Part shown: positions 1 through 39,887 of the stretch, piece by piece
Position numbering within the stretch: the stretch's first letter is position 1
Layout: each line of letters opens with the position of its first letter
Virus record (IMG/VR): IMGVR_UViG_3300020165_000007
Location: 1-64,000 of that record
DNA length: 64,000 nt
Reading direction: 5' to 3' (one strand)
The notes under the pieces: model-generated
The model's input: the letters and a program-made list of their open reading frames with translations, nothing else
Database searches by the model: none
What the model was told of the DNA's origin: nothing
Position numbers and translations under genes: made by a program

Positions 1-688
1 CTGAACTACCTGACGTTCCACTACTTCCTGAAGAACCTGACGTTCCACTACTTCCTGAAGAACCTGATTCTCCACTTGAACCTGAAGAACCTGATGTTCC
101 ACTACTTCCTGAAGAACCTGATGTTCCACTACTTCCTGAAGAACCTGATTCTCCACTTGAACCTGAAGAACCTGATGTTCCACTACTTCCTGAAGAACCT
201 GATGTTCCTGACGAACCTGAACTACCTGATTCTCCACTTGAACCTGATGAACCTGATGTCCCACTACTTCCTGAAGAGCCTGACGTTCCTGAAGAACCGC
301 TACTTCCGCTAGTTCCTGATGAACCTGATGTTCCACTAGAACCTGACGTTCCTGATTGTCCCGTTCTTATCCATTGAGTACCATCGGTTTGAAGTTGGAT
401 GGATTGTAAAGGTGTTAGTACTATATCATCTTGTGATAAGTCAATTAGTGTATCATCATCTGTACCAATAATTAGATTACTAGTTTCTGATAAATTTTTA
501 AATATATATAACTTACCTGTTAAAGTAGTCGCAGATGCCGGAATAGTTACCACAATGTTGGTACTACCGCTCGCTACAATACTGTAATCATCATCTAAAA
601 GAATATAATCACCGTCCTCATTTCTAATAGGTAACGTTATATCACCTTTAGAAACTAAACCATTCCTTATTACAAGTTCATTTGCCAT
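1..688 (-). CDS. GSS/GTS collagen-like fibre protein, partial (runs off the left edge; absent from the ORF track)
   Basis: ATG at 688 gives MANELVIRNGLVSKGDITLPI...LQSIQLQTDGTQWIRTGQSGTSGSSG..., a paralogue of the 755..4960 N-terminus, followed by Gly-X-X repeats up to the edge. Confidence 0.85.
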   Translation of the reverse strand, partial: MANELVIRNGLVSKGDITLPIRNEDGDYILLDDDYSIVASGSTNIVVTIPASATTLTGKLYIFKNLSETSNLIIGTDDDTLIDLSQDDIVLTPLQSIQLQTDGTQWIRTGQSGTSGSSGTSGSSGTSGSSGSSGTSGSSGSSGTSGSSGSSGESGSSGSSGTSGSSGSSGTSGSSGSSGESGSSGSSGTSGSSGSSGTSGSSGSSGESGSSGSSGTSGSSGSSGTSGSS

Positions 689-707
689 ATATAAATATTG
701 TTATATT

Positions 708-743
708 TTAAACTGAACCTGACGGTTGCCAGGTTCAGTTTAA
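708..743 (-). terminator. Hairpin, probable intrinsic terminator
   Basis: 14-bp inverted repeat TTAAACTGAACCTG/CAGGTTCAGTTTAA just downstream of the 755 stop. Confidence 0.6.
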
Positions 744-754
744 TAATTTTATTA

Positions 755-3700
755 TTACATATACTCACCTAAAGGGCGAACATTTATAGTAATAGTATAT
801 GTACCACTTGTTATTGTGAAGCCTAAACTAGCTACTCCGCCAGTGGAGGTTACCCTAAACGAAAGTCCTGCCGTGGAACCTCCAGCATCTCTAGTTGAGG
901 TGTCCGTAAATTGTACCGATGTACTTGTTCCGTCCCAAGCTGATAAGATTGTTCCTGTTCTTGCTCCTGTTGTAGCGTCTGTCTTTTTAACCACATAATC
1001 AATAACCATACCGTCATAATCTGACTGGTTTACAGAGTAGAATGTAGTGTTACTACTCACGACTCCCGCTTGACTAAAGGTTTTAACACCTCTAAACAAG
1101 TCAAATTGTATACAAACGTTATCTACAGGTGTATTTGAAGTGTCAACAAGTGGTGACGCGTATACTGCAGTTGGTGTTATAGTTAGTATGTTACTTGAGA
1201 ATGAAGTTCCTTCCGCATCGAATTCATAGATGATATAACTATCAGTATCATTAAGTTCTGTAATAGTTAACGTTCCACTTAACCGTCTGCCGTTAATCAT
1301 TGTGTAATACTGAGTCCAATCAACACCATCAAAGTTTGTATCAAATATTCTAATAGTACTTGCTGTTGTAATACCTCCAACAAATTGAATGTCACCGTTC
1401 GCATCGGGTACGTTAGAATCTACCTTATAAGTATTACATATTCCTTCACCTGATGTTCCTGAAGAACCACTACTTCCTGAAGTACCTGAAGAACCTGACG
1501 TTCCGCTACTTCCTGAAGAACCTGACGTTCCTGAAGAACCGCTACTACCACTAGTTCCGCTTGAACCTGAACTACCTGACGTTCCACTACTTCCTGAAGA
1601 ACCTGATGTTCCTGATGAACCGCTTGAACCTGAAGTTCCTGAAGAACCTGAACTACCTGATGTTCCGCTACTTCCTGAAGAACCTGATGTTCCTGAAGAA
1701 CCGCTACTTCCACTAGTTCCGCTTGAACCTGAACTACCTGACGTTCCACTACTTCCTGAAGAACCTGATGTTCCTGAAGAACCGCTACTTCCACTAGTTC
1801 CGCTTGAACCTGAACTACCTGACGTTCCACTACTTCCTGAAGAACCTGAAGTTCCTGAAGAACCTGAACTACCTGATGTTCCGCTACTTCCTGAAGAACC
1901 TGACGTTCCTGATGAACCGCTTGAACCTGAAGTTCCTGAAGAACCTGAACTACCTGATGTTCCACTACTTCCTGAAGAACCTGATGTTCCTGAAGAACCG
2001 CTACTTCCACTAGTTCCGCTTGAACCTGAACTACCTGACGTTCCACTACTTCCTGAAGAACCTGAACTACCTGATGTTCCGCTACTTCCTGAAGAACCTG
2101 ATGTTCCTGAAGAACCGCTACTTCCACTAGTTCCGCTTGAACCTGAACTACCTGACGTTCCACTACTTCCTGAAGAACCTGATGTTCCTGAAGAACCGCT
2201 ACTTCCACTAGTTCCGCTTGAACCTGAACTACCTGACGTTCCACTACTTCCTGAAGAACCTGAAGTTCCTGAAGAACCTGAACTACCTGATGTTCCGCTA
2301 CTTCCTGAAGAACCTGACGTTCCTGATGAACCTGAAGAACCTGATGTTCCTGAAGAACCGCTACTACCACTAGTTCCGCTTGAGCCTGAACTACCTGACG
2401 TTCCACTGCTTCCTGAAGAACCTGATGTTCCTGATGAACCGCTTGAACCTGAAGTTCCTGAAGAACCTGAACTACCTGATGTTCCGCTACTTCCTGAAGA
2501 ACCTGACGTTCCTGATGAACCTGAAGAACCTGATGTTCCTGATGAACCTGAACTACCTGACGTTCCACTACTTCCTGAAGAACCTGACGTTCCTGAAGAA
2601 CCAGATGAACCTGAAGTTCCGCTACTTCCTGATGAACCTGAAGAACCTGATGTTCCTGAAGAACCTGAACTACCTGAGGTTCCTGATGAACCACTACTTC
2701 CTGAAGAACCTGACGTTCCTGAAGAACCAGATGAACCTGAAGTTCCGCTACTTCCTGATGAACCTGATGTTCCTGAAGAACCTGAACTACCGGATGTTCC
2801 GCTACTTCCTGAAGAACCTGACGTTCCTGATGAACCACTACTTCCACTAGTTCCTGATGAACCTGAACTACCTGATGTTCCACTACTTCCTGATGAACCT
2901 GATGTCCCTGAAGAACCACTACTTCCGCTAGTTCCTGAAGAACCAGATGAACCTGATGTTCCTGAAGAACCACTACTTCCACTAGTTCCTGATGAACCTG
3001 AAGAACCTGATGTTCCTGAAGAACCACTACTTCCACTAGTTCCTGATGAACCTGAAGAACCTGATGTTCCTGATGAACCACTACTTCCACTAGTTCCTGA
3101 TGAACCTGAACTACCTGATGTTCCACTACTTCCTGATGAACCTGATGTTCCTGAAGAACCACTACTTCCACTAGTTCCTGATGAACCTGATGAACCTGAT
3201 GAACCTGATGAACCACTACTTCCACTAGTTCCTGATGAACCTGAAGAACCTGATGTTCCGCTACTTCCTGATGAACCTGATGTTCCGCTACTTCCTGATG
3301 AACCTGATGTTCCTGATGAACCTGAACTACCTGACGTTCCACTACTTCCTGAAGAACCTGACGTTCCACTACTTCCTGAAGAACCTGATGTTCCTGATGA
3401 ACCTGAAGAACCTGATGTTCCACTACTTCCTGAAGAACCTGATGTTCCACTACTTCCTGAAGAACCTGATGTTCCTGATGAACCTGAAGAACCTGATGTT
3501 CCTGATGAACCTGAACTACCTGATGTTCCACTACTTCCTGATGAACCTGAAGAACCTGACGTTCCGCTACTTCCTGATGAACCTGATGTTCCTGATGAAC
3601 CTGAACTACCTGATGTTCCACTACTTCCTGATGAACCTGATGTTCCTGATGAACCTGAACTGCCTGATGTTCCACTACTTCCTGATGAACCTGAAGTTCC

Positions 3701-4960
3701 GCTACTTCCTGAAGAACCTGATGTTCCTGATGAACCACTACTTCCGCTAGTTCCTGATGAACCTGAAGAACCTGATGTTCCTGATGAACCTGAAGAACCT
3801 GATGTTCCGCTACTTCCTGATGAACCTGATGTTCCTGATGAACCTGAAGAACCTGATGTTCCTGAAGAACCACTACTTCCACTAGTTCCTGATGAACCTG
3901 AACTACCTGATGTTCCACTACTTCCTGATGAACCTGATGTTCCTGATGAACCTGAACTACCTGATGTTCCACTACTTCCTGATGAACCTGAAGTTCCGCT
4001 ACTTCCTGAAGAACCTGATGTTCCTGATGAACCACTACTTCCGCTAGTTCCTGATGAACCTGAAGAACCTGATGTTCCTGATGAACCTGAAGAACCTGAT
4101 GTTCCTGAAGAACCACTACTTCCACTAGTTCCTGATGAACCTGAAGAACCTGATGTTCCGCTACTTCCTGATGAACCTGATGTTCCTGATGAACCTGAAG
4201 AACCTGATGTTCCTGATGAACCTGAAGAACCTGACGTTCCACTACTTCCTGAAGAACCTGATGTTCCATTGGTAAATGGTGTAAAGCAAATTACCGCTGA
4301 CCCTAAATCAAGCGACATAGGATTAGTACCTACAAAATTATTAGTTTGAATAGTAAATCTATAGTATGTTGTAGCTGACTGAACCGCCTGAGGTGTGATT
4401 GAAGTGAAATTATCACTACTATCAGTTATTGTTATTAAACCAGACTCATTTTCAAACTGAGATAATAGACTTGTAATATCAATTCCGTTTTGAGTCGTAT
4501 CAACAACGATAGCTGTGTTAGTAGGGATACTATTATCTATAGTAATATTGTTATCTGCAGGTGTGACTTGTGACCCACTAATATTGGAAATATTTGTGTC
4601 GTAACATCCAGCACCTAATGAACCTCCTGTTTCACTTATAGTTAACCAGTTAGTACCATTAGTAATGATTTGTAAACTTTCATTAACAGATAAAGTAATT
4701 GTACTTTCACCATCAATAGTATTACCATTACCATCTACAATGACTTTTTGGCTTGAATTAAAATTATTTTTTATGATTAGATTTAACCCCTCTACAGGTG
4801 TAGGTAGGGTCATCGTTCTATTCGACGAAGATGCTGTTACATCTATATAGTAATCTGTGTCCGCATCTATTGAGTAATTAGCGTCATTTATCTCAATCAA
4901 CGGTAGTCTAACACCCCCAAGGGATATTAGACCTTTTCTTAATACAAATCCATTTGCCAT
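755..4960 (-). CDS. Long collagen-like (GSS/GTS) fibre protein, 1401 aa
   Basis: Globular N-terminal region, ~940 aa of unbroken Gly-X-X, globular C-terminal region; lies in the tail-appendage cluster. Confidence 0.85.
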   Translation of the reverse strand: MANGFVLRKGLISLGGVRLPLIEINDANYSIDADTDYYIDVTASSSNRTMTLPTPVEGLNLIIKNNFNSSQKVIVDGNGNTIDGESTITLSVNESLQIITNGTNWLTISETGGSLGAGCYDTNISNISGSQVTPADNNITIDNSIPTNTAIVVDTTQNGIDITSLLSQFENESGLITITDSSDNFTSITPQAVQSATTYYRFTIQTNNFVGTNPMSLDLGSAVICFTPFTNGTSGSSGSSGTSGSSGSSGTSGSSGSSGTSGSSGSSGTSGSSGSSGTSGSSGSSGTSGSSGSSGTSGSSGSSGTSGSSGSSGTSGSSGSSGTSGSSGSSGTSGSSGSSGTSGSSGSSGTSGSSGSSGTSGSSGSSGTSGSSGSSGTSGSSGSSGTSGSSGSSGTSGSSGSSGTSGSSGSSGTSGSSGSSGTSGSSGSSGTSGSSGSSGTSGSSGSSGTSGSSGSSGTSGSSGSSGTSGSSGSSGSSGTSGSSGSSGTSGSSGSSGTSGSSGSSGTSGSSGSSGTSGSSGSSGTSGSSGSSGTSGSSGSSGTSGSSGSSGTSGSSGSSGTSGSSGSSGTSGSSGSSGTSGSSGSSGSSGSSGSSGTSGSSGSSGTSGSSGSSGTSGSSGSSGTSGSSGSSGTSGSSGSSGTSGSSGSSGTSGSSGSSGTSGSSGSSGTSGSSGSSGTSGSSGSSGTSGSSGSSGTSGSSGSSGTSGSSGSSGTSGSSGSSGTSGSSGSSGTSGSSGSSGTSGSSGSSGTSGSSGSSGSSGTSGSSGSSGTSGSSGSSGSSGTSGSSGSSGTSGSSGSSGTSGSSGSSGTSGSSGSSGTSGSSGSSGTSGSSGSSGTSGSSGSSGTSGSSGSSGTSGSSGSSGTSGSSGSSGTSGSSGSSGTSGSSGSSGTSGSSGSSGTSGSSGSSGTSGSSGSSGTSGSSGSSGTSGSSGSSGTSGSSGSSGTSGSSGSSGTSGSSGSSGTSGSSGSSGSSGTSGSSGSSGTSGSSGSSGTSGSSGSSGTSGSSGSSGTSGSSGSSGTSGSSGSSGTSGSSGSSGTSGSSGSSGTSGSSGSSGTSGSSGSSGTSGSSGSSGTSGSSGSSGTSGSSGSSGTSGSSGSSGTSGSSGSSGTSGSSGSSGTSGSSGSSGTSGSSGSSGTSGSSGSSGTSGSSGSSGTSGSSGTSGSSGSSGTSGEGICNTYKVDSNVPDANGDIQFVGGITTASTIRIFDTNFDGVDWTQYYTMINGRRLSGTLTITELNDTDSYIIYEFDAEGTSFSSNILTITPTAVYASPLVDTSNTPVDNVCIQFDLFRGVKTFSQAGVVSSNTTFYSVNQSDYDGMVIDYVVKKTDATTGARTGTILSAWDGTSTSVQFTDTSTRDAGGSTAGLSFRVTSTGGVASLGFTITSGTYTITINVRPLGEYM
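1448..4268 (-). repeat. Coding tandem repeat, 27-nt unit encoding (GSSGSSGTS)n
   Basis: Degenerate 9/27-nt periodicity with synonymous variation; Gly at every third codon. Confidence 0.95.
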
Positions 4961-5042
4961 ATTTTATTTTTTTTAGGTTCTTTTTATTTTTTATATAAAT
5001 ACTTTTATATTGTATATTGTTATCTATTTCTACCTTATATTA

Positions 5043-6590
5043 TTAGAATAATATTTCAGTTCTTATTTTAACGTCCCATATCGTACTATTGGTCGTTGTG
5101 GCCCTTAAAATTATATTACTACCACTAATTAAAGTACTAAATACTATATCATCAGTATTAAATGTACCGTCTAAAGTTGAGTAATCCGTAAATACGTTAC
5201 TACTTCCATTTTTACTTACCGCCGATAATATTTTTCCAGTTCTAAATCCGCTTGTTGATTGTTCATTTACATAATATGTGAATTCGTATGAACTTCCTCC
5301 TGTAGTTGGTAGTGAGACTAAATTATGATTACCATTTGTGGTGATAGTCGTATTAACTGATTGTTGATATGAACTACCATATTGTACACTGTTTCCAGAT
5401 ATTAATAGGTTATTAGTTATTCCGTCAAATGTTAAATTACTTTCTACACTTCCAGTACCATCACCATCATAAGTAATAACCCCATTTACTGTATCTCCAT
5501 CTAACTCTAAAAACCCTGATGTTCCACTACTTCCTGAGGAACCTGATGTTCCACTAGAACCTGAACTACCTGATTCTCCTGAAGAACCTGAAGAACCTGA
5601 CGTTCCACTACTTCCTGAGGAACCTGATGTTCCACTAGAACCTGAACTACCTGATTCTCCTGAAGAACCTGAAGAACCTGACGTTCCACTACTTCCTGAT
5701 GAACCTGATGTTCCACTACTACCTGAACTACCTGATTCTCCTGAAGAACCTGAAGAACCTGACGTTCCACTACTTCCTGAGGAACCTGATGTTCCACTAG
5801 AACCTGAACTACCTGATTCTCCTGAAGAACCTGAAGAACCTGACGTTCCACTACTTCCTGATGAACCTGATGTTCCACTACTACCTGAACTACCTGATTC
5901 TCCTGAAGAACCTGAAGAACCTGACGTTCCACTACTTCCTGAGGAACCTGATGTTCCACTAGAACCTGAACTACCTGATTCTCCTGAAGAACCTGAAGAA
6001 CCTGACGTTCCACTAGAACCTGAACTACCTGATTCTCCTGAAGAACCTGAAGAACCTGATGTTCCACTAGAACCTGAACTACCTGATGTTCCTGATGAAC
6101 CTGAAGAACCTGACGTTCCACTACTTCCTGAGGAACCTGATGTTCCACTAGAACCTGAACTACCTGATTCTCCTGAAGAACCTGAAGAACCTGATGTTCC
6201 ACTAGAACCTGAACTACCTGATGTTCCTGAGGAACCTGATGTTCCACTAGAACCTGAACTACCTGATTCTCCTGAAGAACCTGAACTTCCTGACGTTCCA
6301 CTAGAACCTGATGAACCTGATTCTCCACCCGCACCTCCTTCTTTTAATACTAAATCCGAATCTGTAATACCTGAAAAATACCAATAATTTTGTATTCCAT
6401 CTTCAGCCTCTGTTAATTGTAGTCCGTTATATGTTGTTGTACCAGTAACTATACCTACAGTTAACCCTACAAACCTATTCGCACTTACAATACTACTATT
6501 AGCGACTGTAGTGCTACTATACGGACCATATCTTGAATCGAGTGGTAAACCACCTTGTAAATCTATATTACTACTTAAAACTATTCCCAT
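5043..6590 (-). CDS. Collagen-like (GSS/GTS/GES) fibre protein, 515 aa
   Basis: N-domain LPLDSRYGPY...RFVGLTV, ~270 aa Gly-X-X, C-domain homologous to that of 755..4960 (RTG.ILSA...FTD.ST.D). Confidence 0.85.
   Translation of the reverse strand: MGIVLSSNIDLQGGLPLDSRYGPYSSTTVANSSIVSANRFVGLTVGIVTGTTTYNGLQLTEAEDGIQNYWYFSGITDSDLVLKEGGAGGESGSSGSSGTSGSSGSSGESGSSGSSGTSGSSGTSGSSGSSGTSGSSGSSGESGSSGSSGTSGSSGSSGTSGSSGSSGTSGSSGSSGTSGSSGSSGESGSSGSSGTSGSSGSSGESGSSGSSGTSGSSGSSGTSGSSGSSGESGSSGSSGTSGSSGSSGTSGSSGSSGESGSSGSSGTSGSSGSSGTSGSSGSSGESGSSGSSGTSGSSGSSGTSGSSGSSGESGSSGSSGTSGSSGSSGTSGSSGSSGESGSSGSSGTSGSSGSSGTSGFLELDGDTVNGVITYDGDGTGSVESNLTFDGITNNLLISGNSVQYGSSYQQSVNTTITTNGNHNLVSLPTTGGSSYEFTYYVNEQSTSGFRTGKILSAVSKNGSSNVFTDYSTLDGTFNTDDIVFSTLISGSNIILRATTTNSTIWDVKIRTEILF
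5513..6330 (-). repeat. Coding Gly-X-X repeat with GES roughly every 27 aa
   Basis: Near-exact ~81-nt higher-order repeats visible in the DNA. Confidence 0.9.
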
Positions 6591-6594
6591 GATA

Positions 6595-9516
6595 TTATAC
6601 TGTAGATGTTCTTAATTGCATCGACCCAAAACTTTGGGTTTCTGTTTGATAGTTACCTATGTAAATTTTATACCCTACTCCATTCCAATAACCGTCAGGA
6701 CTATCAATATTTGCAGTATCAAAGGTTTGGAATAATCCAGTTGAACCAAAGTTCCCTTTGTTTAAATCAGACACGAAATAACTCTGCTTTGTGTTATATT
6801 CTTCGAAATGTGCAAACCATAAGAACTCAGAAGAAGCATTAAATGTTATTGTTAATGTACTATCTTGGTTATTCGTAATTGATGACTTATTAGCCGTTCC
6901 TCCCGATATTGCGTCTTGAATAGAACTAATTGTTGGTTGGGTGGATGATGTACCATACCAATATGGATATACACCTGTAATCGTTCTGTTGGACGCATCT
7001 AAGTTTGTCCTGGCAGCCTGTGGGGTATTACTATTCGTTCCAAAACTTCTAGTATCGTCATTACCTTTATTGTCTTTTTTAACAACACCTGCGTCGCAAT
7101 CACCTTCCGCGTCATACGTAGTTGAACTACTTGTATTACTTCCTGTTGGTGTGGGTACTGTTAATGTTTCACTAAGTGCCGTACTAGTATATGTGTGGTT
7201 AGGGTTATTATTATTTGTAAATCCAAATTGGTCTGGTATATCAGTAGCGGACCCTTCTGTTGGTGAATTATCTGTTATAACATCGGATGAATTTTTTCTT
7301 AGTCTGATGGACGTGAACTCACCCGCATCATTCTTAGTAGCGACACCTGTAAAGTTTATACTTTCTGTAGTTCCTACCTCAAGAGTTTGACTATTTATAC
7401 CACTAGTAGTAATTGAAGGTGTTGTATATGTTGGTAATACAGTTGGGAATAGTAAGTCGTTAAATAAATCAACCATAGTTTTTCCTGTTAAATCGGCAAC
7501 TGTCGTTCCAGCCTCTATACCTCCTACATCTGCATCCATTTCTAAAGAACTCGTTAAATTAGTATTATATATTGTGTCCGCAGTATAAGGTGTTGATGTG
7601 GTTCCTGAACCTGTTATTCTCACTCCTTCACCACCTACAGTTTCACCACCTATACCTGATGTTCCTGATGAACCTGAACTACCTGATTCTCCTGAAGAAC
7701 CTGAACTTCCTGATGTTCCACTAGAACCTGAACTACCTGATTCTCCACTACTTCCTGATGAACCTGATGTTCCACTACTACCTGAACTACCTGATTCTCC
7801 ACTACTTCCTGATGAACCTGATGTTCCACTACTTCCTGATGAACCTGATTCTCCACTACTTCCTGATGAACCTGACGTTCCACTAGAACCTGAACTACCT
7901 GATTCTCCACTAGAACCTGATGAACCTGACGTTCCACTAGAACCTGAACTACCTGATTCTCCACTACTTCCTGATGAACCTGATGTTCCACTACTTCCTG
8001 ATGAACCTGATTCTCCTGAAGAACCTGAACTTCCTGATGTTCCACTACTACCTGAACTACCTGATTCTCCACTACTTCCTGATGAACCTGATGTTCCACT
8101 ACTACCTGAACTACCTGATTCTCCTGAAGAACCTGAACTTCCTGATGTTCCACTACTACCTGAACTACCTGATTCTCCACTACTTCCTGATGAACCTGAT
8201 GTTCCACTACTACCTGAACTACCTGATTCTCCACTACTTCCTGATGAACCTGATGTTCCACTAGAACCTGAACTACCTGATTCTCCACTAGAACCTGATG
8301 AACCTGACGTTCCACTACTTCCTGATGAACCTGATTCTCCTGAAGAACCTGAACTTCCTGATGTTCCACTAGAACCTGAACTACCTGATTCTCCACTACT
8401 TCCTGATGAACCTGATGTTCCACTACTTCCTGATGAACCTGATTCTCCTGAAGAACCTGAACTTCCTGATGTTCCACTACTTCCTGAACTACCTGATTCT
8501 CCACTACTTCCTGATGAACCTGACGTTCCACTACTTCCTGATGAACCTGATTCTCCTGAAGAACCTGAACTTCCTGATGTTCCACTAGAACCTGAACTAC
8601 CTGATTCTCCACTACTTCCTGATGAACCTGACGTTCCACTACTTCCTGATGAACCTGATTCTCCTGAAGAACCTGAACTTCCTGATGTTCCACTACTACC
8701 TGAACTACCTGATTCTCCACTACTTCCTGATGAACCTGATGTTCCACTACTTCCTGATGTTCCACTACTTCCTGATGAACCTGAACCTCCACCAGTAAAA
8801 CCCGTGACACTTACCGTATCACCTAAATTATTATAAAGTTCTAATGTTGAAGTTCCGCTTAAGTATGTTCCACCTGTTATTGTCGTTAATCCACTTATGG
8901 TAACCGTGTTACCACTATTTGAACTTAAGCTTAAATCTCCGGTACTATTATAATCTACAGTACCTCCCGTAACTTGCCAGTCAGTACCCCAAAATATCCT
9001 CCATCTTGCATTAGTGGCACTAACTCCATTATATCCTTCAACTGTTGAACCTGTCCAAGCGTTTAGTAAGTTTGTACCATCGGTTGTTGCGTTGGTGACA
9101 CTATATAGCCCATCTCCCGAATTATATGAAATCGACCCCGCACTGTCAGCAGCATTAAATAAACTTTCATAATTTGGTATGACATACTGATATGTTTTAT
9201 CAACTTCTCTGACGTAAACCAACATACCAATTTTTCTTCTTCCTGAAGATATCCCATCAGCCCAAAGTTTAACAGTGTCGGGTAAAAAAGATAATCCTCT
9301 TTCGACATACCTTATCGGTATGGTGTTAGCAGATAATTGTATATCTGAACCAGGACTACCGGTTAATATTAAATCTAAATCGCTTATAGTATTAACTTCC
9401 CTATAACCTCCAATATTATTAATACTAAAGTTACTACCTACATATGTTTCAGGTTGTAATGATATCGCGTCTGTATTAACTATTGACGATTTTGGAGTTC
9501 TATATTCGTATGCCAT
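6595..9516 (-). CDS. Collagen-like fibre protein, 973 aa
   Basis: N-domain with RRKIGMLVYV, ~380 aa (GESGSSGSSGTSGSSGSS)n, beta-rich C-terminal region. Confidence 0.85.
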   Translation of the reverse strand: MAYEYRTPKSSIVNTDAISLQPETYVGSNFSINNIGGYREVNTISDLDLILTGSPGSDIQLSANTIPIRYVERGLSFLPDTVKLWADGISSGRRKIGMLVYVREVDKTYQYVIPNYESLFNAADSAGSISYNSGDGLYSVTNATTDGTNLLNAWTGSTVEGYNGVSATNARWRIFWGTDWQVTGGTVDYNSTGDLSLSSNSGNTVTISGLTTITGGTYLSGTSTLELYNNLGDTVSVTGFTGGGSGSSGSSGTSGSSGTSGSSGSSGESGSSGSSGTSGSSGSSGESGSSGSSGTSGSSGSSGESGSSGSSGTSGSSGSSGESGSSGSSGTSGSSGSSGESGSSGSSGTSGSSGSSGESGSSGSSGTSGSSGSSGESGSSGSSGTSGSSGSSGESGSSGSSGTSGSSGSSGESGSSGSSGTSGSSGSSGESGSSGSSGTSGSSGSSGESGSSGSSGTSGSSGSSGESGSSGSSGTSGSSGSSGESGSSGSSGTSGSSGSSGESGSSGSSGTSGSSGSSGESGSSGSSGTSGSSGSSGESGSSGSSGTSGSSGSSGESGSSGSSGTSGSSGSSGESGSSGSSGTSGSSGSSGESGSSGSSGTSGSSGSSGESGSSGSSGTSGIGGETVGGEGVRITGSGTTSTPYTADTIYNTNLTSSLEMDADVGGIEAGTTVADLTGKTMVDLFNDLLFPTVLPTYTTPSITTSGINSQTLEVGTTESINFTGVATKNDAGEFTSIRLRKNSSDVITDNSPTEGSATDIPDQFGFTNNNNPNHTYTSTALSETLTVPTPTGSNTSSSTTYDAEGDCDAGVVKKDNKGNDDTRSFGTNSNTPQAARTNLDASNRTITGVYPYWYGTSSTQPTISSIQDAISGGTANKSSITNNQDSTLTITFNASSEFLWFAHFEEYNTKQSYFVSDLNKGNFGSTGLFQTFDTANIDSPDGYWNGVGYKIYIGNYQTETQSFGSMQLRTSTV
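7655..8790 (-). repeat. Coding 54-nt repeat (GESGSSGSSGTSGSSGSS)n
   Basis: Strict alternation of GES and GTS every 9 aa. Confidence 0.9.
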
Positions 9517-9527
9517 TTATTATATTT

Positions 9528-11711
9528 TTACGAGACGGTTCCACCTCTTAGGAATACATCATTTGAAGTGTTGTTTATCTGCATCCCAGAGGCCGCCCAT
9601 GTTGAATACAGTCTATACTCTGTGTTCGTATATACTGTACCTGTGTAGTCAAGTAATCTATCATATAAAGTATTACTAGTATTAAAAGTGGTTCCGTATG
9701 AACTAGAAGTGCCATACTCTATTTGTGTAACTCTATTACTTGAACCACCTAAGGTGTTCTGTGGTACCGCAACTATATACCATGCACTTTCACTTACAGT
9801 TCCATCAGGTACTTCAAATTCATCAAATAAGTTTTGTCTAGGTCCTGATTGAGGAACCGTTGATGTGTATACCTGTGGTAATCCGGTAACTCCCGAAGTA
9901 GCATACATTTCCATCCATGTGAGTAATGAATCGTTTGTTGTTGCTGCGAATCCAGCGTTAAATCCGAAGAAATCAGGGAAAGAAATTCCTTGACCATTTA
10001 AATAACCTGATATGTCGCTACTCTTGGATGCAGGCTCGATAAATAGAAGTGCGGGTCCTAAGGCAGCCGCACTAGGTGTTATACTTGGTGTCACTGTTGC
10101 TGATGGTGTTATAGTCGGCGTTGCCGTGATTGATGGCGTTGCCGTGATTGATGGCGTTGCCGTGATTGATGGCGTTGCCGTGATTGATGGCGTTGCCGTG
10201 ATTGATGGCGTTGCGGTAATTGATGGAGTTGCGGTAATTGATGGAGTTGCGGTGATTGATGGAGTTATCGATGGTGTTGCAGTTATCGATGGTGTGGCTG
10301 TTATTGACGGTGTAGCTGTTATTGACGGAGTTGCGGTGATTGATGGAGTTGCAGTTATTGATGGTGTTACTGAAGGAGTCGCGGTTATTGACGGAGTGGC
10401 TGTTATTGATGGTGTTGCGGTGACTGATGGTGTTGCAGTTATCGATGGTGTTGCAGTTATCGATGGAGTTACTGATGGTGTTGCAGTTATCGATGGTGTT
10501 GCAGTTATCGATGGTGTGGCTGTTATTGACGGTGTAGCTGTTATTGACGGAGTTGCGGTGATTGATGGAGTTGCAGTTATTGATGGAGTTGCGGTGATTG
10601 ATGGTGTTACTGAAGGAGTCGCGGTTATCGATGGTGTTGCAGTTATCGATGGTGTTGCAGTTATCGATGGTGTTGCAGTTATCGATGGAGTTACTGATGG
10701 TGTTGCAGTTATCGATGGTGTTGCAGTTATCGATGGTGTTGCAGTTATCGATGGTGTTGCAGTTATCGATGGTGTGGCTGTTATTGACGGTGTAGCAGTT
10801 ATTGACGGAGTTGCGGTGATTGATGGAGTTGCAGTTATTGACGGAGTTGCGGTGATTGATGGAGTTGCAGTTATTGATGGAGTTGCGGTGATTGATGGTG
10901 TTGCAGTTATCGATGGTGTTGCAGTTATCGATGGAGTGGCCGTTATCGATGGTGTTGCTGTTATCGATGGTGTTGCGGTTATCGATGGAGTTGCGGTGAT
11001 TGATGGAGTTGCAGTTATTGATGGTGTTGCGGTTATCGATGGCGTTGCAGTTATAGACGGTGTTGCCGTTATCGATGGTGTTGCGGTTATCGATGGAGTT
11101 ACCGATGAAGTAGGTGTAGGAGACTCTCCTGGTGTTACTGAAGGAGTCGCGGTTATCGATGGAGTTGCAGTTATCGATGGTGTTGCAGTTATCGATGGTG
11201 TTGCTGTTATCGATGGTGTTGCGGTTATCGATGGAGTTGCAGTTATCGATGGTGTGGCTGTTATTGACGGTGTAGCAGTTATTGACGGAGTTGCGGTGAT
11301 TGATGGAGTTGCCGTTATCGATGGTGTTGCAGTTATCGATGGTGTTGCGGTTATCGATGGAGTTACCGATGAAGTAGGTGTAGGAGACTCTCCTGGTGTT
11401 GCTGTTATCGATGGAGTGGCCGTTATCGATGGAGTGGCCGTTATCGATGGAGTTGCTGTTATTGATGGAGTTGGTGTTGGTGATACACCAATATTAACGG
11501 TAGTGGTAGTACCACTGCACGGTCCCGCATCACTAACAACTATATACACACTATTAGTGTCGTCATCTAAAAAAGTAATTCCGTTTACTAACTGGTTTCT
11601 AGTCACTCCAGTTATAAAGTTTGCGGGAATCTGTGAAGTGTGGTATATATCCAAGGTCGATATGTCCACACCCACACTTGTACCGCTTAATGTTACTTCT
11701 CTTTGCGCCAT
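9528..11711 (-). CDS. Mucin-like (TPSITA)n stalk protein, 727 aa
   Basis: Short N-domain, ~470 aa Thr/Pro/Ser repeat, ~180-aa globular C-domain; ATG preceded by the TATTTAT element. Confidence 0.85.
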   Translation of the reverse strand: MAQREVTLSGTSVGVDISTLDIYHTSQIPANFITGVTRNQLVNGITFLDDDTNSVYIVVSDAGPCSGTTTTVNIGVSPTPTPSITATPSITATPSITATPSITATPGESPTPTSSVTPSITATPSITATPSITATPSITATPSITATPSITATPSITATPSITATPSITATPSITATPSITATPSITATPSVTPGESPTPTSSVTPSITATPSITATPSITATPSITATPSITATPSITATPSITATPSITATPSITATPSITATPSITATPSITATPSITATPSITATPSITATPSITATPSITATPSITATPSITATPSITATPSITATPSITATPSVTPSITATPSITATPSITATPSITATPSVTPSITATPSITATPSITATPSITATPSITATPSITATPSITATPSVTPSITATPSITATPSVTATPSITATPSITATPSVTPSITATPSITATPSITATPSITATPSITATPSITPSITATPSITATPSITATPSITATPSITATPSITATPSITATPSITATPTITPSATVTPSITPSAAALGPALLFIEPASKSSDISGYLNGQGISFPDFFGFNAGFAATTNDSLLTWMEMYATSGVTGLPQVYTSTVPQSGPRQNLFDEFEVPDGTVSESAWYIVAVPQNTLGGSSNRVTQIEYGTSSSYGTTFNTSNTLYDRLLDYTGTVYTNTEYRLYSTWAASGMQINNTSNDVFLRGGTVS
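10070..11480 (-). repeat. Coding 18-nt repeat (TPSITA)n
   Basis: 18-nt periodicity with synonymous variation. Confidence 0.95.
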
Positions 11712-30495: not shown

Positions 30496-32334
30496 TTATG
30501 AGAAATCTACGTTCTTCAATTGTTTTATTCTAACTTTGATATCTTTTTCAGGAAACTTTACCTGATATATCTGATTTGGTTGTGCAAAAATAGTATCATC
30601 AATTAATTCAATTTGTTTAGTGTTTTTGTCCAAATATCTTTGTGAAGTTTCTGAAGACGAATATTGACCCCCAGTTTTATTAAAAACTTTTAAATCCGCC
30701 AATGTACTAACTCCAGGAATATCTTGTATTAATCTCCTTATGTCGGATATATTTATGTTCTTACCTAATAGATTAGTCGATGGTGACATATATGAATTAA
30801 CACTATCAACTATACTCGTTATTACTTGTCCTTGATTTTCACTAGATTCCATTGACACTGAAAATACAAATTCTAAATCAATTACTTGAGCACTTCTTAC
30901 TGAAATATAATCATTAATCATCCTGTAATTAGATAAATAATTTGCAATATTTTGTTTTAATGTATTTGATACGTTACTAGTTAACTTACCATTATCATCA
31001 AATGATAATATTTCTATTTTAATCTTATTATCCTCTTCCGTTATAGACGCCTTAGCCGGCGCTCCAAACCTACTCGGCATAGTTCTAATTAAAGAATTAT
31101 AATCATTTACCGTAACGGCCCTTTTTTGTGCCGCAAAATTATAGGTAACCATATTACGCACTTCCTCAGTAGTAGGTAAGTTACCCCCACCTATCGCTGC
31201 GGTTACATTATTAGACCTTAAACTTTGAATTACATTCTGATTAATGTTAGGTGATGGTCCGTTAACCGAAAAATTAATGGTTCCGATTTGGTTGATTGTG
31301 TTTACCCCGATGTTAGAACCTATCCCACCCCCTATTCTATATTTAACAAATAGTGTAGTATTAGCCTTAACAGTTCTACCTAACCCAATATTGTTTTGAT
31401 AATTTTCAAGCCTAAGCGGTATTCCTGTTTTTGCAAATTGAGCTAACTGGTCGTCAGCAGTAACTGTAGCGGAACCGAAAGTTAATTTACAATAACCCTC
31501 AGGTGTATATTCAGAAATAAATCTACTTTCAGTTTCAATATAACGACCCACTTTTATCCCTGGATTATCTGAAGCCTTTGTGGGGTCTTCAACAAATACT
31601 GTATTTTCTGCCAACGCATCTACCTCATACCATCTATCAGGTGCAGTTATAAATTCACCATAAGTAGGTGGGCTTGAGTAAGTAATACCATCTTTCTGAA
31701 TTAATGATGTTATACTTATAACGTTTTTTTCAGGTAAGAAGAACTCATAAAATGGTTTAACATCATTATTATTAATTACTTTTTTAAATATTTTAGTGGT
31801 ACCATTAACAACAACCTCTCGTTTAGTTATAGTATAATTAATAATTCGATTATTACTATCAAAATTCGGTATTTTAGTTCTGTTAGGGAATCCACTACTA
31901 TTATATTGAGTACTAAAGTCGATATCGTCTTGGTTTTCAAATATTTGACCCGCACCTATAAACTGAGAACCTGACCTTATAATACCTAAATACCTACTGT
32001 CTTCTTGGTCTCCAAAAGCTGGAACAGTAATAGACACATCTAATAACGCAATAGAAGGTCTATTACCAGGTATTTTTAATCCATATGTTCTAGCGATATT
32101 ATATATTGAAGATTTTTGTTGAGCGTATTGTAATACAGTTTCTTGTATACTTCTGTCTATATGATAATTTAAGTTGTCTCCAATAGCCGCGTTTAAATCT
32201 AAAAATACTGAGAATACGGAAGCGTCATTAAAATTATCAATGAGGTCCGGATAATACTGTCTTGTAAAGTTTATAAGGTCTTGTCTTAAACCTTCAAAAT
32301 CTCTTTCCGTATATGATATTTTACGATTAGCCAT
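30496..32334 (-). CDS. Baseplate wedge protein (T4 gp6 / baseplate J-like)
   Basis: N-terminal YTERDFEGLRQDL, YRIGGG..SN, AQKRAVTVNDY motifs; follows the gp25-like gene. Confidence 0.85.
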   Translation of the reverse strand: MANRKISYTERDFEGLRQDLINFTRQYYPDLIDNFNDASVFSVFLDLNAAIGDNLNYHIDRSIQETVLQYAQQKSSIYNIARTYGLKIPGNRPSIALLDVSITVPAFGDQEDSRYLGIIRSGSQFIGAGQIFENQDDIDFSTQYNSSGFPNRTKIPNFDSNNRIINYTITKREVVVNGTTKIFKKVINNNDVKPFYEFFLPEKNVISITSLIQKDGITYSSPPTYGEFITAPDRWYEVDALAENTVFVEDPTKASDNPGIKVGRYIETESRFISEYTPEGYCKLTFGSATVTADDQLAQFAKTGIPLRLENYQNNIGLGRTVKANTTLFVKYRIGGGIGSNIGVNTINQIGTINFSVNGPSPNINQNVIQSLRSNNVTAAIGGGNLPTTEEVRNMVTYNFAAQKRAVTVNDYNSLIRTMPSRFGAPAKASITEEDNKIKIEILSFDDNGKLTSNVSNTLKQNIANYLSNYRMINDYISVRSAQVIDLEFVFSVSMESSENQGQVITSIVDSVNSYMSPSTNLLGKNINISDIRRLIQDIPGVSTLADLKVFNKTGGQYSSSETSQRYLDKNTKQIELIDDTIFAQPNQIYQVKFPEKDIKVRIKQLKNVDFS

Positions 32335-32339
32335 ATAAT

Positions 32340-32819
32340 TTAAATATTAATTATTATAAAATCTCTACTTTCAAATGTAGTATCTTTAATAGAATAGTCT
32401 ATTTTTACTTTCGCAGTATATTCATCTACCCCTTCACCTGCAGTTCTAAAAATGTCAAACATTTCATATTCAGAATTTTCGTCTTCGGTATTTAGAGTAC
32501 CCGAAACATTCCTATCATCTTCACTATAAGGGGATATAGATATGTCATTAATCTGTAAATTAGGTATGTATTTATCAACTGATGTTTGTATATCTGATTT
32601 TATTGCATCAAATGTTGGTCCGTCCATTGGTTCAAAAATAAACTCATATATCCTAGTTCCAAAGTCAGGTAAGTAATATCTACTACCTTTCCTTGTTAAT
32701 ATTAAATGTAATAAATCCGTCCTTATCTCATCTTCGGCAGTTTTTGTCCGAGTGAGATAGTTACCATTAACACTTTCAGAAAATGGAAATTTTATACCAT
32801 ATGATTTATTTATTGCCAT
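32340..32819 (-). CDS. Baseplate wedge / sheath initiator (gp25-like)
   Basis: LILTRKGSRYYLPDFGTRIYEFIFEP is the GPW/gp25 signature. Confidence 0.9.
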   Translation of the reverse strand: MAINKSYGIKFPFSESVNGNYLTRTKTAEDEIRTDLLHLILTRKGSRYYLPDFGTRIYEFIFEPMDGPTFDAIKSDIQTSVDKYIPNLQINDISISPYSEDDRNVSGTLNTEDENSEYEMFDIFRTAGEGVDEYTAKVKIDYSIKDTTFESRDFIIINI

Positions 32820-37801: not shown

Positions 37802-38809
37802 TTAGTTTTTTTTAAATCTTCTTTTTTCTTTTCTTGTTAGTTTCATAAATGGGGTAAGAAAATAAACCCATGCGTTGTCAGTTTTAGGTAGGTATTTGAA
37901 TATTCCATCATCCATCATCATCCTCATCAAATTTTGATACCCCCTACCTTCAGGGTCAATATCTTCAGAGTAATAAAGTTCAACTAGTTCTTTCGCTTCT
38001 TCAGTTAACAAAGGTACTGATAAATCCACAAGTTTCCTATTAATAACATAAAATTCATCACCATATACCCCTCTCTTAGTTTTACCCGATAGTAGGTTTT
38101 GTAACGCTCTGTTATCCTTATCATTTTCGTGTAGTTTTTCACCTTTTTCTAAAATATCGTCAACAGAGACCACGGAATCAACTATCTCAGGGAAAAGTTT
38201 TACAAAAGTTTTTTCACCAAAATAGTAAATACCATCAATATTGTCGGACTTATCTCCTGATATAATTTTAAAAGTAGAAACATTTTGATGGGGTATTGAT
38301 ATATCTTTCAATTTAACTTTATCTCCGTACTTAATCATTTGTTTCTGTGTTGGAGAATATATTTGTACTTTTTCAGATATTAGTTGTGTTAGGTCTTTAT
38401 CCGCAGAAAATATAGTTTTGTTTTCATCCTCAGAGATATGACAATAATACGCTATCATATCATCTGACTCATTACCATCAACTATAATCTGACGTATAAA
38501 CATTTCCTCAAGATACTCTTTTACTCTTTTGAGTTGCCATTCAAATGATTGTTTTTGAATATCATTAAGTCTGTTATACCTTCTATTTTCTTTATATTCT
38601 GCGAAAATTTTCTTCCTCTGTATTGAGTTATCATTTCCGTCCCAAAAAACGATTACCTTATCATAGTTATACTCTGAAATAAATCTACGTAAAGTATTAA
38701 CAAAGTGATATATACCACCAATATGGTTACCTTTATGATAATACTCACGTACTCCATGATAACCTATCTTAAATAGGTTATTTCCATCCACTAATAAGGT
38801 CTTAGTCAC
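37802..38809 (-). CDS. 5'-3' exonuclease / flap endonuclease (T4 RNase H-like)
   Basis: LLVDGNNL, YKENR, ESDDMIA, SADKDLTQL, GDKSDNIDG motifs. Confidence 0.92.
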   Translation of the reverse strand: MTKTLLVDGNNLFKIGYHGVREYYHKGNHIGGIYHFVNTLRRFISEYNYDKVIVFWDGNDNSIQRKKIFAEYKENRRYNRLNDIQKQSFEWQLKRVKEYLEEMFIRQIIVDGNESDDMIAYYCHISEDENKTIFSADKDLTQLISEKVQIYSPTQKQMIKYGDKVKLKDISIPHQNVSTFKIISGDKSDNIDGIYYFGEKTFVKLFPEIVDSVVSVDDILEKGEKLHENDKDNRALQNLLSGKTKRGVYGDEFYVINRKLVDLSVPLLTEEAKELVELYYSEDIDPEGRGYQNLMRMMMDDGIFKYLPKTDNAWVYFLTPFMKLTRKEKRRFKKN

Positions 38810-38819
38810 ATTAAAATAC

Positions 38820-39824
38820 TTAAAGAATTAAACTTTCTTCTTCCAACTTAAAGTCACTACCTGTACCAATAATATCTTTCCAATATTCAGAGTTTTCAGA
38901 TTTATACTTTTCGATAGATTTTTTTTCCTCAGAGGAATCCTTTCCGGGTAAAAACCCGTGAGCAGTAACTAATATTCTACCGTCTTCATAACCTAACCCA
39001 TTAATGTGGTTTTTCATAACTGAGACCTTAGTTCTAGTTGCAAATTTTACTTTTCTTTTATCTTTAACCGCAGTTATCTTTGTAGTACCCGCATTTTTTT
39101 GATTTCCAAAAAGAAAAACTAATGATGAGTTTAACCAAATAGCCTCTCCTCCTTTAGCTTTAATCTTAGGCTGACCAAAAGGATTATCTGGAAGTTCAAC
39201 CCATGGTTGGTTAACAATTACTAAAGTATTTTCGTGTTTTGAATCTGACCTACGAGAACCTGATATTCTTTGGTTTATTCCCATACCTATCTTATCTGCC
39301 AAAACTGCCGCATTATGTTGCTTACCACCTTTACCGTCATATGTCATCTTACATGGAACTGAACCAACTGAATCCCATAAAAATAGTAAGTCATAATCCA
39401 AATCTCCACTACTTTGAGCATCTAACAATTCATTAATAAAATTAGTAATTTGTTCAATATATTCAAAGTTATTATTAAAAAGGAAAAATCCATCCCAATC
39501 TAATTCTCCCGTTTCTTTATCAACAACTTCTTCACATTCAAAACCCATAAGTTTTGCATGCTCAAAAGACCATTTCTGCTCTGTTATTATAAAAACAGGG
39601 AGTATACCTTTTTTTTGTGCGTCAACAGCAGCTTTAACAAGTGCTGTAGTTTTTCCTGTATCCGAGTGACCTAAAAACATATTAAGGTGACCCATTGCCG
39701 GTCCAGGTACCCCTACTGCATCTAAGAAATCAGTACCTAAATCATAAAACCTTTGCGGTTTAAACTTAGCTGATGAAGAAAATTTCTTCTTAATATCTTT
39801 AAAGTCTTTCTTTTTAATTGCCAT
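38820..39824 (-). CDS. recA: RecA/UvsX-family recombinase
   Basis: GHSDTGKTT Walker A, LFLWDSVGS Walker B, VNQ, KGG and KNH motifs. Confidence 0.88.
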   Translation of the reverse strand: MAIKKKDFKDIKKKFSSSAKFKPQRFYDLGTDFLDAVGVPGPAMGHLNMFLGHSDTGKTTALVKAAVDAQKKGILPVFIITEQKWSFEHAKLMGFECEEVVDKETGELDWDGFFLFNNNFEYIEQITNFINELLDAQSSGDLDYDLLFLWDSVGSVPCKMTYDGKGGKQHNAAVLADKIGMGINQRISGSRRSDSKHENTLVIVNQPWVELPDNPFGQPKIKAKGGEAIWLNSSLVFLFGNQKNAGTTKITAVKDKRKVKFATRTKVSVMKNHINGLGYEDGRILVTAHGFLPGKDSSEEKKSIEKYKSENSEYWKDIIGTGSDFKLEEESLIL

Positions 39825-39840
39825 TTTTTTTTAATTAAAA

Positions 39841-39874: not shown

Positions 39875-39887
39875 ACATTTGTAATCT

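What the first reader, a model, noticed from the sequence alone, without database searches (positions are those of the whole stretch)
1..9516. Mix-and-match fibre cassette: shared end domains joined by near-identical repeat DNA
Seen: <1..688 and 755..4960 share an N-domain (MAN..V.R.GL.S.G...LP...S.Q..T.GT.W). 755..4960 and 5043..6590 share a C-domain (RTG.ILSA...FTD.ST.D) but have different N-domains. 5043..6590 and 6595..9516 have weakly similar N-motifs (RFVGLTV / RKIGMLV) but different C-domains. All four use the same DNA repeat words in direct orientation. Inference: recombination between repeat tracts (the phage encodes RecA and SSB) that keeps the Gly-X-X register would swap anchor and tip domains and change fibre length in frame. 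This would be an RT-free, invertase-free diversification system for receptor-binding appendages.
Basis: partly seen in the sequence, partly recalled or inferred. Interest (0 to 1): 0.75.

Follow-up and report, generated by a model that had tools for sequence, protein, structure and literature searches.

The report
Collagen-stalked phage tail fibre gene array
Four neighbouring genes of a marine jumbo phage encode tail-fibre-like proteins with end domains joined by long Gly-Ser-Ser stalks; related phages carry these domains in other pairings, which fits the known way phage fibres evolve rather than a dedicated diversity engine.

Summary
The repeats are real. Four same-strand genes (O1 <1-688, O2 755-4960, O3 5043-6590, O4 6595-9516) carry uninterrupted Gly-X-Y tracts of 40+, 314, 92 and 128 triplets, almost all GSS, GTS or GES.

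The shared N-domain of O1 and O2 is confirmed (36% identity). The shared C-domain of O2 and O3 holds only for the last ~75 residues. The N3/N4 motif is not significant.

Tract DNA shares short words. Long identical stretches join only O1-O2 (73 nt), O3-O4 (70 nt) and O2-O3 (51 nt). Within one gene they reach 283-295 nt.

In 40 related metagenome loci the N-C pairing is not fixed. I found N4-GXY-C3, N4-C3 and N3-C3 without a tract, N3-GXY-C2, and an N1/N2-type domain on C4. These include the fusions expected from recombination between tracts.

Breakpoints also lie outside tracts. Tract "dialects" mostly stay gene-specific across lineages, and no within-population chimera was seen. Short-read assemblies cannot give trustworthy tract lengths.

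Best reading: these are trimeric collagen-stalked fibres next to the baseplate genes, evolving by ordinary homologous recombination. The tracts are one of several junction types. Repeat-mediated exchange in phage collagen is already a published idea.

The parts
1..688 (-). O1, 5' part only (cut by the contig start). N1 attachment-type domain at 350-688. Gly-X-Y tract at 2-361 (40 triplets seen).
   Evidence: The full gene in near-identical locus L010 is 1041 aa: N1, 221 triplets, a domain, 15 triplets, a domain.
755..4960 (-). O2, 1401 aa. N2a 4622-4960 (homologue of N1). N2b 4268-4621. Tract 1442-4267 (314 triplets, GTS/GSS only). C2a 1076-1441. C2b tip 758-1075.
   Evidence: The N2a model has pLDDT 86 and resembles CBA120 TSP4 N-terminal domains and T4 gp10/gp9.
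5043..6590 (-). O3, 515 aa. N3 6336-6590. Tract 5508-6335 (92 triplets, in 27-aa units that begin with GES). C3a adaptor 5376-5507. C3b beta-sandwich tip 5046-5375.
   Evidence: Pfam Collagen hit of 135 bits. Homotrimer model of a short allele scores 0.75 against a best control of 0.00. Tip model and fold matches to phage tailspike and gp9 C-terminal domains.
6595..9516 (-). O4, 973 aa. N4a 9067-9516 (variable). N4b 8791-9066 (conserved). Tract 7639-8790 (128 triplets, 18-aa GES units). C4 6598-7638.
   Evidence: Part of C4 matches a crAss-like phage 'tail protein' at 39% identity.
9021..9061 (-). Recombination breakpoint inside O4 at the N4a|N4b boundary. Against loci L009 and L029, identity jumps here from about 50% to 90-100%.
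   Evidence: Coordinates 6450-6490 in locus L008 correspond to window 9021-9061.
6336..7638 (-). C4 plus N3 block: the end of O4, a 4-nt spacer and the start of O3. It is bounded by the O4 and O3 tracts and is co-inherited in every relative that has either part.
   Evidence: 23 of 23 loci in the same allele class. (also adjacent in L043 and L044). (codon-level identities).
9528..11711 (-). Upstream neighbour U, 727 aa. It has N- and C-domains joined by a Pro/Ser/Thr hexapeptide repeat tract. This is the same 'domain-spacer-domain' design with a different spacer.
30496..32819 (-). Baseplate wedge genes: gp6-like at 30496-32334 and gp25-like at 32340-32819. They lie upstream on the same strand and place the cassette at the distal end of a tail/baseplate module.
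   Evidence: phrog_219 at 3e-19; phrog_261 at 4e-18..
37802..40784 (-). Recombination genes: exonuclease at 37802-38809, UvsX-like recombinase at 38820-39824, SSB at 39888-40784.
   Evidence: The Pfam RecA hit is weak, E 2.5e-5 and below the cut-off.

Best explanation
The region is the distal part of the tail/baseplate module of an uncultured marine jumbo myovirus (270 kb). Its nearest isolates are Flavobacterium phages.

It encodes a tandem array of modular appendage (fibre) proteins: four in the window, and at least a fifth beyond the contig start. Each has three parts. The first is an N-terminal attachment domain; for O1 and O2 this has a gp10/TSP4-like fold. The second is a Pro-free collagen-like Gly-Ser/Thr-Ser stalk of very variable length. 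The third is a C-terminal beta-sandwich tip.

The proteins most likely form homotrimers nucleated by the end domains. If the tracts fold as triple helices, they act as long spacers of roughly 80, 110 and 270 nm for O3, O4 and O2. That is inference from about 0.29 nm per residue.

The array evolves by general homologous recombination between related co-infecting phages and, occasionally, between tracts of neighbouring paralogues. This has repeatedly re-paired N and C modules, fused or split genes, and added or removed stalks.

Shown: the domain anatomy, the repeat statistics, the alternative pairings in relatives and the mapped breakpoints. Inferred: the triple helix, the fibre function, and the claim that tract-to-tract crossing-over produced the fusions. 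I see no evidence of a dedicated or high-frequency diversification mechanism.
For: - Anatomy and repeats.
- Collagen Pfam hit of 135 bits against a cut-off of 27.
- Baseplate genes upstream on the same strand.
- N1/N2 domain family: 3756 representative proteins, often N-terminal. Its fold resembles CBA120 TSP4 N-terminal domains and T4 gp10/gp9.
- The C3 tip fold resembles tailspike and gp9 C-terminal domains.
- Trimer model 0.75 against a best control of 0.00. That mark was reached by 21 of 30 solved homodimers and 0 of 23 solved monomers.
- Alternative architectures in 40 related loci.
- Module identity, allele-class and codon tables show mosaicism. Examples: L009 has N4a 50% but C4 97% and N3-N2a 99-100%. 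L029 has N4b 87%, C4 99% and N3 96% between flanks of 29-58%.
- Inter-gene exact matches of 51-73 nt exceed the codon-shuffle null for adjacent genes only.
- UvsX-like recombinase, SSB and exonuclease are present.
- The literature already proposes collagen-like repeats as phage recombination hotspots (PMC7242381; PMC5601072, citing Duplessis and Moineau 2001).
Against: - No virion, structural or host data exist, so 'fibre' rests on gene context, fold resemblance and a model.
- The tract has no Pro or charged pairs, and the trimer model gave no confident interface inside it. It could be a flexible linker rather than a triple helix.
- All relatives come from short-read assemblies, which break or collapse tracts. 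Tract lengths are therefore unreliable.
- A mis-join through a tract cannot be formally excluded for any single contig.
- Strong conservation of the C4-N3 block is partly purifying selection rather than recent transfer. Amino-acid identity is 90-95%, but only 56-68% of conserved codons are identical in several lineages.
Confidence: 0.72

Rival explanations
1. The tracts work as an active, intragenomic, recombinase-driven cassette system. At appreciable frequency within a phage population it swaps anchors and tips and resets fibre length in frame, producing host-range variants each generation.
For: - Direct-repeat tracts share 51-73 nt of exact identity between neighbours.
- A UvsX-like recombinase and an SSB are encoded.
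- Fusion products of the predicted kind exist in relatives.
- O3 alleles with 100% identical ends carry 15 to 92 triplets in different assemblies.
- GES units appear in O3 only in this lineage.
Against: - All near-identical assemblies (L006, L007, L009-L012) and the contigs of four runs keep the same pairing.
- The fused forms sit in lineages 20-50% diverged, so they are old fixed events.
- Tract dialects stay gene-specific across lineages.
- Within-gene repeats (283-295 nt) are far longer than between-gene matches.
- Crossing-over between direct repeats deletes the intervening domains rather than swapping them.
- Length differences are what k-mer assemblers produce on such repeats. Most contigs start or end inside tracts, and Logan contigs shatter into 48-60-nt pieces there.
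Confidence: 0.12
2. The tracts play no special part in recombination. Mosaicism arises from recombination anywhere (legitimate or illegitimate), followed by selection for functional joins at domain boundaries. Tract DNA is alike only because the same amino-acid pattern and codon preferences are selected.
For: - Breakpoints occur at N4a|N4b, C3|N2a and N2a|N2b without any tract.
- The same domains are joined with no tract in L037-L040, L043 and L044.
- O1 and O3 share the same 27-aa unit written in different codons.
- Three of the six gene pairs share no more than the codon-shuffle null.
Against: - Adjacent pairs share 51-73 nt, above the null maximum of 38-47.
- The L029 breakpoint lies in the first triplets of the O3 tract.
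- The co-inherited C4-N3 block is bounded by two tracts.
- Both observed gene fusions join exactly through a tract.
Confidence: 0.3
3. Most of the apparent variation, both tract lengths and chimeric genes, is a short-read assembly artefact caused by collapse or mis-joining through repeats.
For: - The window contig and most related contigs begin or end inside tracts.
- Tract lengths differ among 100%-identical flanks, mostly in steps of the 27- or 81-nt unit.
- One allele has a register break (P0005).
- k=31 contigs join the O3 and O4 tracts through anchors of 20-33 nt.
Against: - N4-GXY-C3 occurs in three contigs. L004 is an ENA MEGAHIT assembly; L026 and L027 are two JGI records of near-identical sequence. 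L004 differs from L026/L027 in allele class for C3 and N2a. All three genes are intact ORFs.
- Tract-free joins (L037, L038, L039, L040, L043) cannot be repeat mis-joins.
- Module-level mosaicism lies in unique sequence.
Confidence: 0.15

Closest known systems
Bacteriophage collagen-like tail fibre proteins (Pfam PF01391 in phage tail genes; Smith et al. 1998 'Bacteriophage collagen', as cited in PMC1079782; cyanophage P-SSM2 orf028)
   Same: Uninterrupted Gly-X-Y tracts lie between non-collagen end domains, inside a tail-gene module. X and Y are often Ser or Thr. A trimer is expected.
   Different: Here X and Y are almost only Ser, Thr or Glu, with no Pro. Tracts reach 314 triplets. At least five such genes sit in tandem.
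Streptococcus thermophilus phage antireceptor (ORF18 of DT1-type phages; Duplessis and Moineau 2001, as cited in PMC5601072 and PMC7242381)
   Same: Host-range domains are separated by collagen-like repeats. The repeats have been proposed as recombination hotspots, and related phages carry different domain combinations.
   Different: That case is a single gene in small siphoviruses, with short repeats and experimental host-range swaps. Here there is a paralogue array, gene fusion and fission, and no experiments.
Guarani virophage ORF8 collagen-like gene (PMC7242381)
   Same: An in-frame 81-nt change in collagen-like repeats of 27-nt units is linked to host range. The unit sizes are the same as here (27 and 81 nt).
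   Different: A virophage of giant viruses. The deletion was observed directly by PCR and sequencing.
T-even distal tail fibre locus, where recombination between conserved motifs swaps adhesin specificity (Tetart et al. 1998; recalled from my own knowledge, not checked here)
   Same: Fibre genes are mosaic, and short conserved segments flanking variable domains serve as crossover sites.
   Different: The conserved segments there are short motifs, not long low-complexity collagen tracts.
Bacillus anthracis BclA exosporium filament (recalled from my own knowledge, not checked here)
   Same: A collagen-like tract of strain-variable length sets filament length, and a C-terminal globular trimerising head follows it.
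   Different: A spore protein with GPT triplets. The head fold was not matched here.
CBA120 TSP4/TSP2 N-terminal domains and T4 gp10/gp9
   Same: The N1/N2a model matches these attachment domains (Foldseek E 3e-5 to 8e-4, TM 0.58-0.67).
   Different: Sequence identity is only 12-22%. There is no sequence-level match to any solved structure.

Membership tests
Collagen triple-helix repeat proteins (PF01391) | Long uninterrupted Gly-X-Y triplet runs | tested here: met
   The runs are 40+, 314, 92 and 128 triplets.
Collagen triple-helix repeat proteins (PF01391) | Pfam model score above the gathering cut-off | tested here: met
   O3 scores 135.3 bits against a cut-off of 27.2.
Collagen triple-helix repeat proteins (PF01391) | Stabilising residues in X/Y (Pro/Hyp or charge pairs) | tested here: not met
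   The triplets are GSS, GTS and GES only, with no Pro, Lys or Arg.
Collagen triple-helix repeat proteins (PF01391) | Formation of a triple helix | tested here: inconclusive
   The trimer model passes (0.75 against 0.00). Its confident contacts lie in the N3 and C3 domains, not in tract residues 86-129.
Phage tail fibre / baseplate-attached appendage | Gene lies in the tail/baseplate module | tested here: met
   gp25-like and gp6-like baseplate wedge genes lie at 30496-32819 on the same strand, with an uninterrupted run of same-strand ORFs down to the cassette.
Phage tail fibre / baseplate-attached appendage | Attachment and tip domains with folds seen in known tail proteins | tested here: met
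   N1/N2a resembles CBA120 TSP4 N-terminal domains and T4 gp10/gp9. The C3 tip resembles tailspike and gp9 C-terminal domains. N3, N4 and C4 have no fold evidence, apart from a 39% match of part of C4 to a crAss-like phage tail protein.
Phage tail fibre / baseplate-attached appendage | Homotrimer | tested here: met
   Prediction only: ipSAE 0.75, best control 0.00.
Phage tail fibre / baseplate-attached appendage | Present in the virion and binds a host receptor | not testable with these tools
   The phage is uncultured and its host is unknown.
Collagen-repeat recombination modules (S. thermophilus phage antireceptor type) | Variable domains flanked by collagen-like repeats and re-assorted among related phages | tested here: met
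Collagen-repeat recombination modules (S. thermophilus phage antireceptor type) | Recombinants or deletions arising at the repeats observed directly | not testable with these tools
   Only Logan k=31 contigs were available, and the tracts shatter in them.
Programmed diversification systems (DGR, invertase shufflons) | Reverse transcriptase with template repeat | tested here: not met
   No PF00078 match in the 270-kb contig.
Programmed diversification systems (DGR, invertase shufflons) | Site-specific recombinase and inverted crossover sites | tested here: not met
   No resolvase or integrase match. All tracts are in direct orientation.

The most novel reading that the evidence does not exclude
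Tract-to-tract recombination is still active within populations of this phage. It continually produces length alleles and O4xO3 or O3xO2 fusion or fission variants.

In this reading the always-co-inherited C4|N3 block is a non-covalent joint cassette. Inserting or removing it between two collagen tracts would convert a one-piece fibre (N4-stalk-C3) into a two-piece, jointed or branched fibre. That would be a recombinase-only way to remodel receptor-binding appendages.
Probability: 0.15. Interest if true: 0.7.

Novelty: new variant of a known kind. Interest (0 to 1): 0.45.

Why it matters
Collagen-like repeats in phage fibre genes have long been suspected to act as crossover sites, but clean natural examples are few.

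This locus offers one. It is a tandem array of at least five collagen-stalked genes in a phage detected in marine and estuarine runs filed from 2014 to 2025. Relatives show the very fusions, fissions and re-pairings that such crossovers predict, alongside counter-examples that set limits on the idea.

It is a good target for long-read viromics, to measure how fast fibre length and domain pairing really change in the sea. The Pro-free Gly-Ser/Thr-Ser stalk is also of interest as an unusual, possibly very long, protein spacer.

Tried and rejected
- **Phage genome collection.** megablast of two window stretches found nothing.
- **IMG/VR scans.** Scans with N2 and with the C3 profile found no relatives besides the contig itself.
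- **End-domain families.** Pfam and PHROGs gave no significant family. The N1/N2 and C3 profiles hit no solved structure by sequence.
- **Reads.** All 24 runs are kept as Logan contigs, none as raw reads. The k=31 contigs of the four runs I laid break into 48-60-nt unitigs in the tracts. Their 'joints' between the O3 and O4 tracts have only 20-33-nt anchors, so they say nothing about chimeras or lengths.
- **Four-gamete test.** Applied to allele classes of adjacent modules, it found no complete set of four combinations. The recombination argument rests instead on sharp identity jumps.
- **N3/N4 homology.** Rejected.
- **Rejected hypotheses.** A DGR or invertase mechanism is excluded. The plus-strand ORF 10012-11742 is not a gene; it is the mirror frame of the Pro/Ser/Thr repeat gene.
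Full report
**Where the window lies.** The window is the first 64 kb of a 270,383-bp IMG/VR viral contig, Ga0206125_10000015, classed as linear with a CheckV completeness of 88%. The contig starts inside a Gly-X-Y repeat and ends inside a different repeat. All genes of the region are on the minus strand.

**Gene context.** Upstream on the same strand lie gp25-like and gp6-like baseplate wedge genes at 30496-32819. After them comes a run of large ORFs. These include a protein with SprB repeats at 11792-14710 and two proteins with Pro/Ser/Thr hexapeptide repeat spacers. The nearest isolated phages are Flavobacterium myoviruses, at 26% identity in the baseplate protein. The cassette therefore sits at the distal end of the tail/baseplate module of an uncultured marine jumbo phage.

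**The observation.** Four ORFs carry uninterrupted Gly-X-Y tracts:

| Gene | Window coordinates | Triplets |
|---|---|---|
| O1 | <1-688 | 40 seen (gene cut by contig start) |
| O2 | 755-4960 | 314 |
| O3 | 5043-6590 | 92 |
| O4 | 6595-9516 | 128 |

- The triplets are almost only GSS, GTS and GES. These are the only such genes in the contig.
- O3 matches Pfam Collagen at 135 bits.
- N1 and N2 are homologous: 36% identity over 113 aa, E 3e-13.
- C2 and C3 share only a terminal subdomain of about 75 residues. BLASTP finds a 31-aa motif. hhalign gives 83.7% probability, E 8e-6. In addition, the C2b query finds C3-type tips at 26-39% identity in related loci.
- The N3/N4 motif is not significant.

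**Tract DNA.** The tracts share 9-mer words.
- The longest exact inter-gene matches are 73 nt (O1-O2), 70 nt (O3-O4) and 51 nt (O2-O3). The other three pairs share 32-34 nt, which is within a synonymous-codon-shuffle null (means 27-34, maximum 47).
- Within a gene, exact repeats reach 283-295 nt.
- Sharing of 27-mers shows two dialects, O1/O2 and O3/O4.
- O1 and O3 use the same 27-aa unit written in different codons.

**What the proteins are.**
- A profile of N1/N2 finds 3756 representative proteins, many with the domain at the N-terminus.
- Its AlphaFold model (pLDDT 86) resembles the N-terminal attachment domains of CBA120 TSP4 and T4 gp10/gp9.
- The C3 tip folds as a beta-sandwich like the C-terminal domains of tailspikes and of gp9.
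- A homotrimer of a short O3 allele scores 0.75 against 0.00 for the best control. That mark was reached by 21 of 30 solved homodimers and 0 of 23 monomers, and this job used three copies rather than two. The confident contacts lie in both end domains but not in the tract.
- I therefore read these proteins as trimeric stalked appendages. Whether the Pro-free tract is a true triple helix is open.

**Relatives.** A search with the C3 domain returned O3 alleles with identical ends but total lengths of 284-434 aa, against 515 aa in the window. It also returned relatives with other architectures. A scan of metagenome contigs gave 36 loci. Four more, L004, L005, L043 and L044, came from look-ups. 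One of the 36, L008, is the window's own contig. I mapped all of them by tblastn with the window's modules. The architectures found were:

| Architecture | Loci |
|---|---|
| Window-like, N3-GXY-C3 | 14 |
| O3 with two tracts and an extra middle domain | 11 |
| N4-GXY-C3 as one intact gene, no C4 or N3 | L004, L026, L027 |
| N4-C3 without a tract | L037, L038 (L037 has U_C 97% and N4a 95% but C3 only about 50%) |
| N3-C3 without a tract | L039, L040 |
| GXY, then a C2a-like domain, then a C3-type tip | L033-L035, L041 |
| N3-GXY-C2a | P0165/L043 |
| N1/N2-type domain on C4, no tract | P0076/L044 |
| O2 orthologues with about 11 and 14 triplets | P0164 and P0026 |

N-C pairing is thus not fixed. 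Two of the forms (N4-GXY-C3 and N3-GXY-C2) are exactly what crossing-over between tracts of adjacent genes would give.

**Limits on the tract hypothesis.**
- *Breakpoints outside tracts.* Nucleotide profiles put the L009 and L029 left breakpoint at window ~9021-9061. This is the N4a|N4b boundary, inside a domain and not in the tract. Other switches lie between C3 and N2a (intergenic) and between N2a and N2b.
- *One breakpoint inside a tract.* The right breakpoint of L029 lies in the first triplets of the O3 tract.
- *The C4-N3 block.* C4 and N3 are in the same allele class in 23 of 23 loci and are bounded by two tracts. Codon-level data show this is partly purifying selection, with 56-68% identical codons at 90-95% amino-acid identity in several lineages.
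- *Gene-specific dialects.* GES triplets mark O4 tracts in most lineages and never occur in O2 tracts. They appear in O3 tracts only in the window's lineage. This argues for a rare conversion event rather than constant homogenisation.

**Population data.**
- The phage is held by at least 14 DNA runs, filed from 2014 to 2025, and by several metatranscriptomes.
- Laid on window 4300-9600, the Logan contigs of four runs reproduce the unique parts with 0-2 differences.
- Inside the tracts those contigs break into 48-60-nt pieces, so neither length nor phase can be read.
- JGI contigs with 100% identical flanks give O3 tracts of 47, 56, 65, 71, 74 and 92 triplets. Most contigs start or end in tracts.
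- This pattern fits real unequal crossing-over and assembler collapse equally well.

**Genes for recombination.** The window encodes a UvsX-like recombinase, an SSB and an exonuclease at 37802-40784. The contig has no reverse transcriptase, resolvase or integrase.

**Comparison with what is known.**
- Collagen-like repeats in phage fibre genes are known. The source is Smith et al. 1998, as cited in PMC1079782.
- They have been proposed as recombination hotspots that flank host-range domains. The source is Duplessis and Moineau 2001, as cited in PMC5601072 and PMC7242381.
- An 81-nt change in 27-nt collagen-like units alters virophage host range (PMC7242381).
- The present case is a variant of that kind. 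It differs in being a tandem paralogue array, in having very long Pro-free tracts, and in showing gene fusion and fission at tracts.

**Verdict.** Evolutionary mix-and-match is real and tracts are among the junctions. A dedicated, active diversification system is not shown.

Noticed in passing
window 1 and the contig's far end (G000:C1:~269980-270383): The contig begins inside the O1 Gly-X-Y tract and ends inside an 18-nt-period Pro/Ser/Thr-type repeat. Both ends are therefore assembly breaks at repeats, not genome termini.
   Followed up: partly
L010:6463-11076 (near-identical strain, JGI contig Ga0208134_1002058): O1 is complete here at 1041 aa: N1, 221 triplets, a domain, 15 triplets, a domain. 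A fifth Gly-X-Y gene follows, with a ~265-aa N-domain and at least 73 triplets. The array therefore extends beyond the window's left edge.
   Followed up: partly
window 2-361 compared with L010:6790-8778: The first 40 triplets of the window's O1 tract contain 3 GES triplets. The 221-triplet O1 tract of L010 has none, while the fifth gene's tract does have them. The contig start may be a mis-join or a different allele.
   Followed up: no
window 10012-11742 (+): A 576-aa plus-strand ORF of GVAVID repeats, with a GC-skew flip at 10001-11500, is the mirror frame of the minus-strand Pro/Ser/Thr repeat gene 9528-11711. It is not a gene.
   Followed up: yes
window 9528-11711, 14697-17372 and 11792-14710: Two proteins use Pro-Ser-Ile-Thr-Ala-Thr-type hexapeptide tracts as spacers between end domains. 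A third, of 972 aa, carries SprB repeats (PF13573), an adhesin repeat named after the Flavobacterium gliding-motility protein. This hints at a Bacteroidota host.
   Followed up: partly
window 6336-7638; also L043:3519-4746 and L044:8069-9395: The C-domain of O4 and the N-domain of O3 are adjacent, separated by a 4-nt spacer, in every lineage that has either one. This holds even where their partner domains differ. They may form a physical joint between two fibre segments.
   Followed up: partly
P0005 (an O3 allele); L043:~5218-5220: One O3 allele has a one-residue break of the Gly register inside the tract. The N3-GXY-C2 gene of L043 has a TGA where the window has a Cys codon, 36 nt from the contig end. 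Either could be a sequencing or assembly error, or a real defect.
   Followed up: no
window 4300-9600 in runs X1, X2, X4 and X10: Unique stretches of 1.2-1.4 kb are identical, or differ by 1-2 bases, in four runs from four studies, one filed in 2014 and one in 2025. Several metatranscriptome runs also hold the phage. It is a persistent and widespread phage.
   Followed up: partly
window 32886-37288: Ribonucleotide reductase large and small subunits and a DnaB-like helicase lie directly next to the baseplate genes.
   Followed up: no
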